Positions 2,481 to 58,676 of a DNA stretch of 64,000 nt are shown piece by piece. Position numbers and translations under genes: made by a program. Under the pieces are notes generated by a model. That model saw only the letters and a program-made list of their open reading frames with translations. It made no database searches and was not told the origin of the DNA. Positions within the stretch are counted from its first letter, which is position 1. Every line of letters begins with the position of its first letter. The stretch is from positions 124,001-188,000 of the IMG/VR virus record IMGVR_UViG_3300050120_000152. One strand, 5' to 3'.

Positions 2481-2567
2481 GCGTCTTTGGGTGAGTGGCT
2501 GAAACCATCAGTTTTCCAAACTGAAACCTGCGAAAGTAGGTCAAGAGTTCGAATCTCTTAGGACGCT
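2481..2567 (+). tRNA. trnG: tRNA-Gly(TCC) with long variable arm
   Basis: GCGTCTT/AGGACGC, U73, TCAGT-TTTCCAA-ACTGA, variable hairpin CCTGC-GAAA-GTAGG. Confidence 0.85.
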
Positions 2568-2574
2568 CAAATAT

Positions 2575-6949: not shown

Positions 6950-7345
6950 ATGAAAACTACGTTAGAACTTTTGAAAGCTGAGGGCTATGAGCCCATCAAA
7001 ATGCCAAAGACCATTAAAAATAAGTGGTTAAATGCTTTACGTTCTGGTGAATATGATCAAGCAACGGGAGCATTATATGATGATAATATTGATGGTGATG
7101 GGAATCCCGGTTTTTGTTGCTTAGGTGTCTTGCAACATTGTTTGACAGGTGGTGTAGAATTCGATGGTGGTATATCTGGAGCAGTTCCATCCGATGAATG
7201 GCTTGATGAATTTAATATTAAAACTAATGACTTTCAAGTCTTTTACAAAGATGATGTACAAACTTTGGCAGACCTCAATGATTGTGAAGGCTTGACCTTT
7301 AAGCAAATCGCTAATATCATTGAAAAACAGGTCGTTGGTGTTTAA
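6950..7345 (+). CDS. WxxALRSG-family phage protein
   Basis: WLNALRSGEY, FCCLGVLQ, LNDC..FKQIA; paralog of the 33.4-36.3 kb array. Confidence 0.8.
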   Translation: MKTTLELLKAEGYEPIKMPKTIKNKWLNALRSGEYDQATGALYDDNIDGDGNPGFCCLGVLQHCLTGGVEFDGGISGAVPSDEWLDEFNIKTNDFQVFYKDDVQTLADLNDCEGLTFKQIANIIEKQVVGV

Positions 7346-7355
7346 AGATTAAGTT

Positions 7356-7498
7356 GCAGTAATGACGGAATTGGTAGACGTGGCGGACTAAACCGACCTC
7401 TGAAAAGTAGAGAGGATAATCGTTAGATAATGGTGTAAATCGGCTGTCCTAGTTACTAACGTATCGAAGACGTGTAGGTTCAAATCCTACTTATTGCG
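7356..7498 (+). ncRNA. tRNA-Leu-like scaffold with about 58 extra nt replacing the anticodon arm
   Basis: GCAGTAA/TTATTGC, Leu-type D arm GACGGAATTGGTAGACGT, T arm GTAGG-TTCAAAT-CCTAC. Confidence 0.7.
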
Positions 7499-7507
7499 AT
7501 GTTTTAT

Positions 7508-7624
7508 ACGTACATAGCTCAGTCTGGGAGAGCAGCCCCGTAGGAGGGGTAAGTTAAATCAATTTGACGTTTAGGCGTTGCAATGCGATACTGGTCGGTG
7601 GTTCGAATCCATCTGTGCGTACCA
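7508..7624 (+). ncRNA. expanded tRNA-like RNA (Pro-like D arm)
   Basis: ACGTACA/TGTGCGT-A-CCA; GCCCC-GTAGGA-GGGGT; 46-nt two-hairpin variable region; canonical T arm. Confidence 0.7.
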
Positions 7625-7723
7625 AATTTAGGAGAATCCCGGTTCGATTCTGGGAGTGCCATGGGCAATGCACAGTCAACCCCGGCGCTAGATTATACGG
7701 CTAAATCGCCTTTAATAAATCAT

Positions 7724-7802
7724 GGGAGCGTAGTTTCAACATAGGTAAAACACGATGCTGGCAGCATTGAGAACCGGGAGCATGTCCACGGCGCATCCAC
7801 CA
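7724..7802 (+). tRNA. atypical tRNA-Ala(GGC)
   Basis: G3:U70, A73, CCA, CGATG-CTGGCAG-CATTG; T-loop AGCATGT is non-canonical. Confidence 0.55.
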
Positions 7803-7871
7803 TATAATACATTGACACTCTAATGAGATTAAAGTATAATTCAAACTCATTTTACTTAGCGAGGGTTATCT

Positions 7872-8429
7872 GTGATGGACAAGAATTTATTTTCTGATGA
7901 AGAATATGCAGAATTGTTTTCTGATGAAACTTCTGTAAAACAGCGTAAAGCTTTGCTTAAACAAGCATCATTGCGGGTTAATTACTTAGTTCATATGATC
8001 TGTACTATGTTTAGCTATAAGTTGGATTGGTGGGATTTTGATAATGAAGATAGGGATGTTGAAAAACATGGTCATTTTGATCCTGATGTTTATACCAAAT
8101 CTATTAAGGTAATTGGGGACTGGAAATCCTTTAATAAAAATAATGAACCGGCAATCAAAGCTCTTGGTGATTATCTACAAGATTATTATAATGAGTTTGA
8201 GTTTGAATATGGATATATACCTTCTGGCTGGTTGAAAGAAGATATAACTGAAGATTTGCAACAACATGTTGACACGTTTTTGAAGGTAATTTATCCGCAA
8301 CAACAGACTACTGAGGCTGCAAAAAAAGCTGCAAAGGATACACATTTGCGTGCTTTACGCAATTCTATCAAAAATAAATTAACATCCGAAGAATATGCTT
8401 TGATTACCTTTCCAAAGCATTTGTTATAA
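7872..8429 (+). CDS. hypothetical protein
   Basis: 185 aa ORF with promoter and GAGG RBS. Confidence 0.65.
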   Translation: MMDKNLFSDEEYAELFSDETSVKQRKALLKQASLRVNYLVHMICTMFSYKLDWWDFDNEDRDVEKHGHFDPDVYTKSIKVIGDWKSFNKNNEPAIKALGDYLQDYYNEFEFEYGYIPSGWLKEDITEDLQQHVDTFLKVIYPQQQTTEAAKKAAKDTHLRALRNSIKNKLTSEEYALITFPKHLL

Positions 8430-24957: not shown

Positions 24958-26109
24958 TCAGTCCGTTGAAGCACATTCGTCTGAAATGTTAAAATCTTTA
25001 TAATGCTTAATAAGCCAAGCTTTGTCATCAAATGGTTTACCAGTATAGTAACTCATAGCTACATTGAACATCATAGGTTCTAGTTCATCTTTAGCCTTCA
25101 AAGCAAATTCTTTGCGCGATAATAAGGAATTATCATGAAAAAATTTAATAGGTGCGTCAAGCTTTTTATATAATTTTCTAACAATTAATTCCATTTCATC
25201 AATACGATTAAGTAAATATATATCATGACTAAAATGAGCCCTTACATCATCACTTAATTCATTAACCACGCACTCAAATAAGTTACGTGGATGAGTTACA
25301 TTGTCTTTCAGTGAATGTAGATTTTTGTACCAGTCACATTTTACTTTAATGTTCATACCATCAACATTGATAACATATCCTTCAATATCTTTCATATTTG
25401 GAATATTGTCTACGAATTCGATCAATTTAACTGGATCAATATCATAAAAATGGTCTTTCACCAAATGCTGAACACAACCAAATTCCTCCATGTCAGATTG
25501 TAACATACTATATGGATAATCCATACCATTCGTCAAATCTCGTGCCGAAAAAATGGTTAAATTGGTTTTTTGATACGGTAAAACAATTCTAAATTTTGCA
25601 TCAGTAAATTCCATACTTACAGAATATCCCTTATGCATCATGTACATGAGGAAATTATGCAACGTTGAGTTTTCTTCCAGCTGAAGAAATTCATTTGCAG
25701 CAATAGCTTGGTCGGATTGTAATGCAGTCTTAGACTTCAAATAAACCATGTCAGCAATAGGAAGTTTATAAGTAGTCATAATACTACCATCCATCTTGTC
25801 CATGATAGATCGAGTCTTGCTGAAATCCAAATTCATTGCCATTTGATTTTCGTTCAAATTAAAAAATTTGCGAGGGGTAAGTGCTGCCAACGATTCATAC
25901 TTATCATCTTTAGTAATGAAAGTAATTCCACGGCATTCCAAAGCCGATGGCTTCAAAAAATCAGTATAGGATGCAAGACGATAAGTGAACACACGGAATT
26001 GAGTACCGTTGAACAGATGGTCAACATAATAAAATGGGCTTTCGTCAGATTCGCATAATGCCATCAAATCTTGATAAAGATCACGGCCATATTGAGTTTG
26101 AACAGTCAT
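24958..26109 (-). CDS. rnlA: T4 Rnl1-like RNA ligase
   Basis: ECRG, KFFNLNE, motif I KMDGS, EGYV, KVKCDWY. Confidence 0.92.
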   Translation of the reverse strand: MTVQTQYGRDLYQDLMALCESDESPFYYVDHLFNGTQFRVFTYRLASYTDFLKPSALECRGITFITKDDKYESLAALTPRKFFNLNENQMAMNLDFSKTRSIMDKMDGSIMTTYKLPIADMVYLKSKTALQSDQAIAANEFLQLEENSTLHNFLMYMMHKGYSVSMEFTDAKFRIVLPYQKTNLTIFSARDLTNGMDYPYSMLQSDMEEFGCVQHLVKDHFYDIDPVKLIEFVDNIPNMKDIEGYVINVDGMNIKVKCDWYKNLHSLKDNVTHPRNLFECVVNELSDDVRAHFSHDIYLLNRIDEMELIVRKLYKKLDAPIKFFHDNSLLSRKEFALKAKDELEPMMFNVAMSYYTGKPFDDKAWLIKHYKDFNISDECASTD

Positions 26110-26650
26110 TGCAATTTCCGATTGTATTAGGGTAAATGAGTTTTTCGTTTTCTATTATAGCATGCTCATGTAACTTATTGTCAAGTGTCTTGGTAGGACT
26201 GATGATATGGGTTACTTTCCATTTATGAATAGCTTCCATATAATCTGATACAATACCACGATGGCATGACCATGGCACGGCTTCGCTACACATATAGGCT
26301 ACTTTATTATCAGTAGCATAACTTTTTAATAATTCGATAGCATGTGCGAATGCTGGATCGTGATAGGCATAATCGGCATAATTACGGAATGCCGGTAATC
26401 GCCATGCTGCATTGTTTCCTGTAGACTTGGGATGTTTCTTACGAAATCCACCAAGTTCTGGCATATGAATGTAGTCAATACCCATCAAAGGTAAAGTATA
26501 TTCAAAATAATCTTTATTAAAATGTGGGAATTTTTTGGAACTTGGAAATGTACGCACGTCAACTAGCATATCAATACGATATGCACTCAACATCTTAACA
26601 AAGGTTCTAAAATCTTTATCAGAGTGGCCTATGGAAAAAATTTCTGGCAT
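26081..26650 (-). CDS. DUF488 family protein
   Basis: IFSIGHS, LVDVRTFPSSK.FPHFN, LGG.R, MCSE..W.CHR. Confidence 0.88.
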   Translation of the reverse strand: MPEIFSIGHSDKDFRTFVKMLSAYRIDMLVDVRTFPSSKKFPHFNKDYFEYTLPLMGIDYIHMPELGGFRKKHPKSTGNNAAWRLPAFRNYADYAYHDPAFAHAIELLKSYATDNKVAYMCSEAVPWSCHRGIVSDYMEAIHKWKVTHIISPTKTLDNKLHEHAIIENEKLIYPNTIGNCNDCSNSIWP

Positions 26651-28450: not shown

Positions 28451-28540
28451 TGGCGGGAGTAGTGGGAGTCGAACCCACGACGTTTAACATTAAATGCATG
28501 GATTTAGAATCCACCGCTCTGACCACTGAGCTATACTCCC
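28451..28540 (-). tRNA. amber suppressor tRNA (anticodon CTA)
   Basis: GGGAGTA/TACTCCC-G-CCA; GTGGA-TTCTAAA-TCCAT; 19-nt variable region; canonical D and T arms. Confidence 0.88.
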
Positions 28541-41179: not shown

Positions 41180-41321
41180 GGGCGTATGGGGGAATTGGTA
41201 GACCCGGCAGACTCATTGAAGTCTTCTAGAAATAGAAGATTTTGTAAAATAAATTTAATAGTTTATTTTACAAAATCTGCTTCCGAAAGGAGTCCCGGTT
41301 CAAGTCCGGGTATGCCTACCA
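41180..41321 (+). tRNA. trnL: tRNA-Leu(CAA) split by a 57-nt insert (41215-41271)
   Basis: Removing the insert gives an 85-nt Leu cloverleaf with GCAGA-CTCAAAA-TCTGC. Confidence 0.85.
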
Positions 41322-57703: not shown

Positions 57704-57809
57704 GGGTCGGTAGCTCAGTTGGTAGAGCAGGAGACTTATTCAAGTATCTTCAATGAGGATACTTCTATTAATCTCTTGGTCGCGGGTTCGAACCCCGCCC
57801 GACCCACCA
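57704..57809 (+). tRNA. trnK: tRNA-Lys(TTT) split by a 30-nt insert (57738-57767)
   Basis: Body resembles enterobacterial tRNA-Lys; removing the insert gives 76 nt with loop CTTTTAA. Confidence 0.88.
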
Positions 57810-58183: not shown

Positions 58184-58676
58184 CAAGGTTTCATCCCTGA
58201 TACAACAACCGGGAATGTAAGGATACTATAATTTTCGGAATATGTCAAGATGCTCATACCATCCGCTGACGTAAGTTATCAGGACTTTTTGTGATATACC
58301 CTTGTGAAGCCGTGGTGTACTGGTTTAGGGTATATTGCAAAAAGGTGTTGACAAGCTGCAATGGTGTTGTATAATACAATTACACAATCGAGAGCTTTAG
58401 CGGTAACAGAATCGACTGTGGGGATGTGCACGGAGCGGCAACGTGTTCACGTTGTGATGTGATAAGGATATAGGACAGTAGGATAACAGAATAAACCCTG
58501 ATTGATTCGCGAGTCAACATGAATAAACCTGTTAGAGTATTGTTACAATCTGAATCATATTGTGGGTTCGAATCCCACCATCCTCCTCGCTAAAGGTAGC
58601 CATTCTGATGAATGGAGAAAATAACACGAGGCACATATGCGCGCCTACTCGATTAACCATCATTTGGCAAAAAGAG

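What the first reader, a model, noticed from the sequence alone, without database searches (positions are those of the whole stretch)
7356..7498. Leu-tRNA scaffold whose anticodon arm is replaced by a possibly pseudoknotted domain
Acceptor, D, variable and T arms are intact. The middle carries about 58 extra nt, similar in size to the Leu intron but unrelated in sequence. Pairings GGAC/GTCC and CCGA/TCGG cross CGTTAG/CTAACG, and no simple excision restores a clean anticodon stem.
Basis: partly seen in the sequence, partly recalled or inferred. Interest (0 to 1): 0.62.

Follow-up and report, generated by a model that had tools for sequence, protein, structure and literature searches.

The report
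Phage tyrosine-type tRNA gene with insert
This is a transfer-RNA gene of a 340-kb peat-soil phage whose anticodon loop is split by a 45-base two-hairpin insert, one of several such "enigmatic intron" tRNA genes in this phage, rather than a new pseudoknotted RNA domain; nobody knows how such inserts are removed in bacteria.

Summary
The tRNA scaffold at 7356-7498 is real: 7/7 acceptor pairs, a 3-bp D stem with a Leu-like D loop, and a 5/5 T arm. ARAGORN (default) and Rfam both miss it.

The middle is better read as two halves of a tyrosine-type anticodon arm. GCGGA-CU (7383-7389) and GUAAA-UCGGC (7435-7444) are separated by a 45-nt insert of two hairpins. An enlarged variable region (7445-7473) follows. 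GTAAATC, conserved in most of the phage tRNA-Tyr genes I fetched, occurs in 0.9% of shuffles.

The phage otherwise lacks a Tyr tRNA. It carries three clean insert-bearing tRNAs (Met, Leu-CAA, Lys). Similar inserts were reported as "enigmatic introns" in Lak megaphages.

Doubts about function: a central G.G mismatch, G73, no encoded CCA (35 of 42 calls encode it), and decayed tRNA pieces next door. No RNA data and no relatives were found, so splicing is untested.

The genome has a T4 Rnl1-type ligase but no EndA or RtcB.

Verdict: a new member of a known but unexplained kind, possibly decaying. In passing I found 90 or more phage Leu-like tRNA scaffolds with no anticodon arm.

The parts
7292..7320 (+). 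sigma-70-like promoter match (TTGACC, 17 nt, TATCAT; 10 of 12), about 36 nt upstream of the element
   Evidence: a consensus match only
7356..7362 (+). acceptor stem, 5' strand (pairs 7/7 with 7491-7497, one G.U)
7363..7382 (+). U8, G9, then D arm (3-bp stem 7365-67/7379-81, Leu-type loop with G18 G19), then G26
7383..7389 (+). 5' half of the anticodon arm: stem strand GCGGA plus C32 U33
   Evidence: CT at this place in only 8 of 112 elongated scaffolds, most of them ones with a recoverable anticodon arm
7390..7434 (+). 45-nt insert. 7-nt leader; hairpin 1 (7397-7401/7411-7415, 9-nt loop); ATA; hairpin 2 (7419-7424/7429-7434, loop AGAT) abutting the 3' junction. The junction can slide by one base (T7389 or T7434)
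   Evidence: same build as the Leu(CAA) insert
7435..7444 (+). 3' half of the anticodon arm: G34 U35 A36 A37 A38 plus stem strand UCGGC (G29.G41 mismatch)
7445..7473 (+). 29-nt variable region: T44, 3-bp stem GTC/GAC (7446-48/7469-71) with a 20-nt loop, then G and T48 (can pair with A15)
   Evidence: inference by comparison with the Leu(CAA) gene
7474..7490 (+). T arm (GTAGG, TTCAAAT, CCTAC)
7491..7498 (+). acceptor stem 3' strand and discriminator G7498; no CCA follows (ATG)
7508..7624 (+). next gene of the same array, 9 nt downstream: 117-nt tRNA-like gene with encoded CCA, a contiguous anticodon arm (loop GUAGGAG) and a 46-nt variable region

Best explanation
The element is a tRNA gene in the tRNA array of a 340-kb phage with direct terminal repeats. 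It is built on a type II (Leu-like) scaffold. Its anticodon loop is interrupted, between U33 and G34 or one base earlier, by a 45-nt insert made of two hairpins. Its variable loop is also enlarged by about 16 nt.

Removing the insert gives the arm GCGGA-CUGUAAA-UCGGC, that is a tyrosine (GUA) anticodon arm with one central G.G mismatch.

It is the fourth insert-bearing tRNA gene of this genome. It belongs to the 'enigmatic introns' reported in Lak and other huge phages.

Shown: the scaffold, the two arm halves, and the parallels within the genome.

Inferred: the precursor is cut out of the array by RNase P and a 3' nuclease and receives CCA from the phage's own nucleotidyltransferase-family enzyme. 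The insert is then removed by a protein endonuclease that measures from the tRNA body. The halves are healed and sealed by the phage's kinase and its T4 Rnl1-type ligase, an enzyme whose known job in T4 is to reseal tRNA anticodon loops.

Whether this copy still works is open. I give about 0.35 to 'spliced and decoding'. The rest of the stated confidence goes to 'of this kind, status unclear'.
For: Scaffold intact. The best of all possible excisions is the 45-nt one restoring CUGUAAA.

Seven of the nine ARAGORN-called phage tRNA-Tyr(GUA) genes in fetched loci carry GACTGTAAATC. A further 36 IMG/VR tRNA-Tyr genes, retrieved with a pattern that required it, show GGACTGTAAATCC. GTAAATC appears in 0.9% of shuffled middles, and in 0.3% together with the further pairs.

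The 5' half GGCGGACT is nearly identical to that of the clean Leu(CAA) insert gene. CT at positions 32-33 is found in only 8 of 112 elongated scaffolds; most of these have a recoverable anticodon arm.

ARAGORN finds no Tyr (or Asn) tRNA among 40-42 genes.

Three clean insert-bearing genes in the same genome (Met 73 nt, Leu-CAA 57 nt, Lys 30 nt) have perfect 5-bp stems, encoded CCA and hairpin-built inserts at 34/35.

Lak phage tRNA-Tyr(GTA) carries a 93-nt insert (10.1101/356790). Such inserts are reported in 262 jumbo phage genomes (PMC13037316).

The genome encodes a T4 RnlA-family ligase, a P-loop kinase with weak PNK likeness and a PolyA_pol/CCA-adding family protein.
Against: The restored stem has a central G.G mismatch. 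The cloverleaf with this arm is 5.6 kcal/mol worse than the MFE.

There is no encoded CCA, whereas 35 of 42 ARAGORN calls encode it. The discriminator is G, although bacterial TyrRS and LeuRS use A73 (my knowledge).

A 4-of-5 stem alone is expected by chance about once in such a region (my estimate; one search shows the target's score inside the shuffled range).

The junction (32/33 or 33/34) differs from 34/35 in the three clean genes.

No split Tyr gene of this form was found in IMG/VR. No relative of the locus was found anywhere. No RNA run exists.

No EndA, RtcB or PrrC/RloC-type protein is in the genome, so the endonuclease is purely hypothetical.

Decayed tRNA pieces lie just downstream.
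Confidence: 0.45

Rival explanations
1. Decaying gene: a former insert-bearing type II tRNA (Tyr-type) that no longer gives a working tRNA. It sits in a stretch of the array where tRNA genes are breaking down.
For: G.G mismatch in the stem, loss of CCA, G73 and an oversized variable region. The 525-nt non-coding stretch 7346-7870 also holds an orphan T arm with CCA (7638-7661) and a tRNA-like piece with an aberrant T arm (7724-7800), neither called by ARAGORN or Rfam. The locus has no conserved relatives.
Against: All 15 scaffold base pairs and the conserved D- and T-loop bases are intact. That is not expected after long neutral decay. The phage has no other Tyr tRNA. A promoter-like site lies upstream.
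Confidence: 0.28
2. Non-decoding tRNA-scaffold RNA. The acceptor, D and T arms serve for processing and stability, and the middle is a cargo domain that stays in the mature RNA. It would be akin to T4 RNAC and to the anticodon-less Leu-like scaffolds of other phages.
For: At least 90 distinct IMG/VR phage sequences have a perfect Leu-like scaffold, mostly no CCA, and a 75-100-nt middle with no hidden anticodon arm beyond chance. T4 RNAC is 139 nt, lies in the tRNA cluster and ends in a T arm and acceptor-like stem; its role is unknown. A second CCA-less 166-nt scaffold lies in this window at 58420-58585. The scaffold-constrained fold prefers another middle structure.
Against: The target keeps CT at 32-33 and the Tyr-type 3' half, which the anticodon-less class lacks. 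The middle has no fold-energy signal, no significant stems, no homologue and no Rfam match.
Confidence: 0.2
3. Self-splicing or archaeal-type intron: a group I intron as in cyanobacterial tRNA-Leu(UAA), or a bulge-helix-bulge intron cut by EndA and joined by RtcB.
For: The position in the anticodon loop resembles known bacterial group I tRNA introns (my knowledge).
Against: 45 nt is far below any group I core, and there is no Rfam intron or ribozyme match. The genome has no EndA or RtcB. No bulge-helix-bulge geometry is evident by inspection.
Confidence: 0.03

Closest known systems
'Enigmatic' introns in tRNA genes of Lak megaphages and other huge/jumbo phages (Devoto et al. 2019; PMC13037316)
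   Same: A phage tRNA gene too long for bacterial tRNA finders. The insert lies in the anticodon loop and is tens of nt long with no ribozyme signature. Tyr(GTA) is among the affected genes, and the Lak Tyr gene also lacks CCA.
   Different: The Lak Tyr insert is 93 nt, is predicted after position 37, and sits in a type I scaffold with a perfect stem. Here the insert is 45 nt at 32/33 or 33/34, in a Leu-like type II scaffold with a G.G mismatch. Splicing has been shown in neither case.
Insert-bearing tRNA-Leu(CAA), tRNA-Lys(UUU) and tRNA-Met(CAU) of the same genome
   Same: Same genome and arrays. Inserts are built of 1-3 hairpins with a short unpaired leader, and the last hairpin is next to the 3' junction. 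The D arm and 5' arm half are almost identical to the Leu(CAA) gene.
   Different: Those have perfect 5-bp stems, a 34/35 junction, encoded CCA and A73. The target has none of these.
Bacteriophage T4 RNAC (species 1 RNA) and RNAD
   Same: Small stable RNAs encoded inside a phage tRNA cluster. RNAC is 139 nt and ends with a canonical T arm and an acceptor-like stem. Their role is unknown.
   Different: RNAC has no D arm and no recognisable anticodon-arm halves, and it folds far better than shuffles (z -4.6). The target has a full D arm and arm halves, and no fold signal.
Group I introns in bacterial tRNA genes (e.g. cyanobacterial tRNA-Leu(UAA))
   Same: An interruption of the anticodon loop of a bacterial-type tRNA.
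   Different: Those are 200 nt or more and are self-splicing ribozymes. Here the insert is 45 nt with no ribozyme match.
T4 PrrC / Pnkp / Rnl1 anticodon-loop break-and-repair pathway
   Same: It supplies the only known bacterial-world chemistry that cuts and reseals a tRNA anticodon loop at 33/34. The phage has an Rnl1-family ligase.
   Different: That pathway repairs a single nick and removes nothing. No PrrC/RloC-type nuclease is present. The link to insert removal is my inference.

Membership tests
Canonical bacterial/phage tRNA (type II) | 7-bp acceptor stem, D arm with G18 G19, T arm with T54 T55 C56 | tested here: met
Canonical bacterial/phage tRNA (type II) | Contiguous 5-bp anticodon stem with a 7-nt loop | tested here: not met
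   No contiguous arm. ARAGORN default and Rfam RF00005 do not call it, even at E up to 10.
Insert-bearing ('intron') phage tRNA genes | One excision in the anticodon region rebuilds a canonical arm (5-bp stem, U33, purine 37) | tested here: inconclusive
   The loop CUGUAAA is canonical and Tyr-typical (P about 0.003-0.009). The stem is only 4 of 5 with a central G.G. The stem score alone is within the shuffled range.
Insert-bearing ('intron') phage tRNA genes | Insert absent from the mature RNA, or an insert-free homologue that defines the junction | not testable with these tools
   No RNA runs. Only identical DNA in three peat runs. No homologue in IMG/VR or JGI contigs.
tRNA-Tyr (bacterial type) | GUA anticodon in loop CUGUAAA, long variable arm, A73 | tested here: inconclusive
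   The loop and a long variable region are present after excision. The discriminator is G, not A. The D arm is Leu-like.
Group I intron | Conserved P3-P8 catalytic core of about 200 nt or more | tested here: not met
   The insert is 45 nt; no Rfam match.
Archaeal/eukaryal tRNA intron (bulge-helix-bulge) | EndA-family endonuclease and RtcB ligase available; BHB motif at the junctions | tested here: not met
   PF01974 and PF01139 are absent from the complete phage genome. The host is unknown. No BHB geometry by inspection.
Anticodon-less Leu-like tRNA scaffolds of phages (found here) / T4 RNAC-like stable RNAs | tRNA scaffold with no recoverable anticodon-arm halves | tested here: not met
   The target keeps the 5-nt strand plus CT and the GUAAAUC half. 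It shares only the Leu-like D arm and the lack of CCA.
   Covariation is not testable because there are no relatives.

The most novel reading that the evidence does not exclude
Short hairpin inserts in phage tRNA genes, including this one, are true introns removed by a protein pathway not yet known in bacteria or phages. An endonuclease that measures from the tRNA body would cut at both junctions. The halves would then be joined by the phage's polynucleotide kinase and T4 Rnl1-type ligase. Rnl1's tRNA-repair activity would then also be a splicing activity. The phage could time or protect its tRNA supply, for example against host anticodon nucleases.
Probability: 0.2. Interest if true: 0.8.

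Novelty: new member of a known kind. Interest (0 to 1): 0.45.

Why it matters
Bacteria and their viruses are thought to have only self-splicing introns in tRNA genes. Huge phages keep turning up tRNA genes with short inserts that cannot splice themselves, and the mechanism has been open since 2018.

This genome offers a compact test set in one phage:
- three clean insert-bearing tRNAs and one imperfect one;
- a T4 Rnl1-type ligase;
- no EndA and no RtcB.

If the inserts are removed, a new kind of tRNA splicing exists in the bacterial world. If they are not, phages carry tRNA-shaped RNAs with other jobs.

For annotation, the phage's only candidate Tyr tRNA is invisible to standard tRNA finders.

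Tried and rejected
Relatives of the locus:
- blastn against cultured phages found nothing.
- Exact and degenerate DNA patterns in IMG/VR and JGI contigs found nothing.
- Neighbouring proteins in IMG/VR gave only distant hits or none.
- Contigs holding homologues of the upstream DUF8296 protein carry tRNA arrays but no homologue of the target.

Reads: three peat DNA runs hold identical sequence. There are no variants, no joints and no RNA.

Pattern for split Tyr genes in IMG/VR: 36 of 37 hits were ordinary unsplit tRNA-Tyr genes with a chance upstream GGACT.

Apparent motif sharing:
- With L021 (AAACCGACCT, CGTTAG): within chance for 112 sequences (and my estimate).
- With the variable region of tRNA-Arg(UCU) (AATCGT...TGTAAAT): local alignment score 18 against a null mean of 19.6. 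Rejected.

Other ideas tested:
- Antisense targets of the middle in the phage's own genome: none.
- ARAGORN on all 2975 single deletions: only poor arms with two or more mismatches.
- A 5-bp direct repeat ACTAA flanking 68 nt as a target-site duplication: the resulting arm is poor.
- Alternative genetic codes: no clear signal for recoding.
- Rnl1 co-occurrence with clean insert-bearing Leu genes: 1 of 5 contigs, but the contigs are fragments (8-67% complete). Inconclusive.
- MAFFT did not align the 3' arm halves of the target and Leu(CAA). That comparison is manual.
- Deaminase next to the kinase: dCMP/dCTP-deaminase-like, not TadA.

Full report
**Where it lies.** The window is bases 124001-188000 of a 340,344-bp IMG/VR virus record with direct terminal repeats, rated complete. 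The same DNA occurs in three peat metagenome runs. GC is about 35% around the locus. ARAGORN finds 40 tRNA genes and a tmRNA in the genome, and 42 tRNA genes in intron mode. So this is a huge phage of a bacterium with a large tRNA set.

**The observation.** The sequence shows a complete tRNA scaffold on the + strand:
- acceptor 7356-7362 paired 7/7 with 7491-7497;
- U8;
- a 3-bp D stem around a Leu-type loop with G18 G19;
- G26;
- a T arm 7474-7490 with loop TTCAAAT;
- T48, which can pair with A15.

My own scan for acceptor/D/T scaffolds picks it up as the only full scaffold in the genome that ARAGORN does not call even in intron mode. ARAGORN default, Rfam at gathering score, and Rfam at E up to 10 all miss it. 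It is 143 nt long, about 56-58 nt more than a type II tRNA.

Perfect 6-mer stems occur in 44% of shuffles of the 91-nt middle. 4-mer stems number 16 against 13 expected. The fold energy is ordinary (z -1.4 and -1.1).

**What the middle is.** I enumerated every single excision that could rebuild a 5-bp stem with a 7-nt loop. I also ran ARAGORN on 2975 deletion variants. The best solution by far removes 45 nt (7390-7434, or 7389-7433). It joins GCGGA-CU to GUAAA-UCGGC. The result is a canonical loop CUGUAAA on a stem with four pairs and a central G.G.

A 4-of-5 stem alone is what chance gives, and the target's score sits inside the shuffled range. Three further observations favour this reading.

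1. The loop and its inner pairs are those of tRNA-Tyr. Seven of the nine phage tRNA-Tyr(GUA) genes that ARAGORN called in loci fetched for other reasons carry GACTGTAAATC. Another 36 IMG/VR tRNA-Tyr genes show GGACTGTAAATCC, although my search pattern itself required those bases. GTAAATC turns up in only 0.9% of shuffled middles, and in 0.3% with the next pairs.

2. The 5' half GGCGGACT is almost the same as in the clean Leu(CAA) gene of this window. Among 112 elongated Leu-like scaffolds, CT at positions 32-33 occurs in only 8, and most of these have a recoverable anticodon arm.

3. The phage has tRNAs for 18 amino acids plus a CUA suppressor, but none for Tyr or Asn.

The insert has a 7-nt leader, hairpin 1 (7397-7415), ATA, and hairpin 2 (7419-7434) ending at the junction. 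The 57-nt insert of Leu(CAA) has the same plan: a 4-nt leader and two 10-bp hairpins, the second ending at the junction.

The remaining extra bases lie in the variable region. It reads T, GTC, a 20-nt loop, GAC, GT. The Leu(CAA) gene has T, TCC, GAAA, GGA, GT at that place. Several other tRNAs of this phage also have oversized variable regions.

**Context in the genome.** Three other genes carry inserts: Met(CAU) 73 nt, Leu(CAA) 57 nt and Lys(UUU) 30 nt. All three have perfect 5-bp stems, A73 and encoded CCA. Rfam scores the Lys gene at 62 bits with the insert looped out. In Met and Lys the junction can only be 34/35. The preserved arm halves argue that these inserts are removed from the RNA, or at least tolerated in it.

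The genome has no EndA-type endonuclease, no RtcB and no PrrC/RloC-type protein. It does have:
- a T4 RnlA-family RNA ligase (window 24958-26109, minus strand);
- a P-loop kinase with weak likeness to polynucleotide kinases;
- a CCA-adding/poly(A) polymerase family protein.

From what is known of T4, Rnl1 with Pnkp reseals anticodon loops cut by PrrC. I therefore propose a cut-heal-seal route, with an unknown endonuclease that measures from the tRNA body. This step is inference.

**Reasons for doubt.**
- The G.G mismatch.
- G73, where TyrRS and LeuRS want A73.
- No encoded CCA, against 35 of 42 ARAGORN calls that encode it.
- A junction one or two bases away from that of the clean genes.
- A cloverleaf 5.6 kcal/mol above the MFE.
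- The company of an orphan T arm with CCA (7638-7661) and a tRNA-like piece with a bad T arm (7724-7800) in the same 525-nt non-coding stretch.

These fit a copy that is decaying. Against long decay, all 15 scaffold pairs and the conserved loop bases are intact.

**Comparison with what is known.** Devoto et al. described tRNAs with 'enigmatic introns' in Lak megaphages, including Tyr(GTA). A 2026 survey reports such inserts in 262 jumbo phage genomes. I found no paper in the held library that explains their removal.

T4 RNAC and RNAD are the classical tRNA-cluster RNAs of unknown role. RNAC ends in a T arm and an acceptor-like stem. Group I and bulge-helix-bulge introns are excluded by size, by the lack of Rfam matches and by the absent enzymes.

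**A by-product.** Of 110 distinct sequences, 90 have 7/7 acceptor pairs. Nearly all have full D and T stems. A73 is usual and CCA is rare.

About ten are plain tRNA-Leu genes with short inserts at 26/27, 32/33 or 34/35 (L035, L088, L091, L104, L115). The rest show no hidden anticodon arm beyond chance. They match no Rfam family other than weak tRNA hits and no cultured phage, and they share no neighbour gene. Most are not in tRNA arrays. Subfamilies conserve their middles.

The target is not one of these, because it keeps its arm halves. This class is the best support for the rival 'scaffold RNA' reading and deserves its own study.

**Limits.** There are no relatives of the locus, no RNA data and no covariation. 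The Tyr assignment rests on sequence logic with P about 0.003-0.009. The junction and the amino-acid identity are inferred.

Noticed in passing
window 41180-41321 and 57704-57809; G000:C1:119832-119981: Three clean insert-bearing tRNA genes: Leu(CAA) 57 nt, Lys(UUU) 30 nt and Met(CAU) 73 nt. All have perfect anticodon stems, encoded CCA and hairpin-built inserts. The junction is 34/35, unambiguous in Lys and Met. The Leu and Lys inserts both begin ATTSAAGT.
   Followed up: partly
L020-L134 (IMG/VR contigs): At least 90 distinct phage sequences with a perfect Leu-like tRNA scaffold (many share acceptor AGTCAGG/CCTGACT), A73, usually no CCA, and a 75-100-nt middle without any recoverable anticodon arm. 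They have no Rfam family, no cultured-phage match and no common neighbour gene, and are mostly solitary. This looks like an undescribed class of tRNA-scaffold RNAs.
   Followed up: partly
window 58420-58585: A second CCA-less elongated scaffold of 166 nt, with a Tyr/Ser-like D loop. Its middle folds into a long imperfect rod (MFE -50.6), and no acceptable anticodon arm is recoverable.
   Followed up: partly
window 7508-7624: A 117-nt tRNA-like gene with CCA, 9 nt after the target. It has a contiguous arm GCCCC/GGGGT with loop GUAGGAG (anticodon AGG, A34) and a 46-nt variable region with two hairpins. ARAGORN's 'Stop(tta) with intron' call looks wrong.
   Followed up: partly
window 7638-7661 and 7724-7800: An orphan T arm followed by AGTG-CCA without a 5' partner, and a tRNA-like 5' two-thirds (anticodon loop CTGGCAG) with an aberrant T arm. 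These look like remnants of tRNA genes in the same non-coding stretch.
   Followed up: no
L017:3739-3842: In a Logan contig of another tRNA-rich phage: a 104-nt Leu-like scaffold with CCA, T loop TCCGAAT (C at position 55), and a middle of a 3-bp stem with a 9-nt loop plus a 6-bp hairpin. Rfam does not call it.
   Followed up: no
window 6950-7345: The upstream gene belongs to DUF8296 (PF26948). It has two paralogues in this genome and more than 250 homologues, and those I looked at lie inside phage tRNA arrays. Function unknown.
   Followed up: partly
window 24958-26109 (-) and 26081-26650 (-): A T4 RnlA-family RNA ligase (241.7 bits against a cut-off of 242.25) next to a DUF488 protein.
   Followed up: partly
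window 28451-28540 (-): A tRNA with anticodon CUA (amber suppressor; ARAGORN labels it 'Pyl') and a long variable arm. A crude ORF-length test gave no clear sign of TAG recoding.
   Followed up: partly
window 2481-2568; G000:C1:117396-117492 and 119731-119817: tRNAs that are normally type I carry long variable regions: Gly(UCC) 88 nt, Arg(UCU) 97 nt and Met 87 nt. Both Gly(UCC) genes lack CCA.
   Followed up: no
G000:C1:111676-111758, 111827-111906; window 7508-7624: Several tRNAs have A at position 34: Leu(AAG), Arg(ACG) and perhaps Pro(AGG). That is unusual for bacteria beyond Arg(ACG). The deaminase at G000 68250-68735 is dCMP/dCTP-deaminase-like, not TadA.
   Followed up: partly
window 7812-7840: A perfect sigma-70 consensus promoter (TTGACA, 17 nt, TATAAT) ahead of the ORF at 7872-8429.
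   Followed up: no
G000:C1:89769-90200: ARAGORN calls a permuted tmRNA with tag peptide ASNDAIYSMEYSLAA.
   Followed up: no
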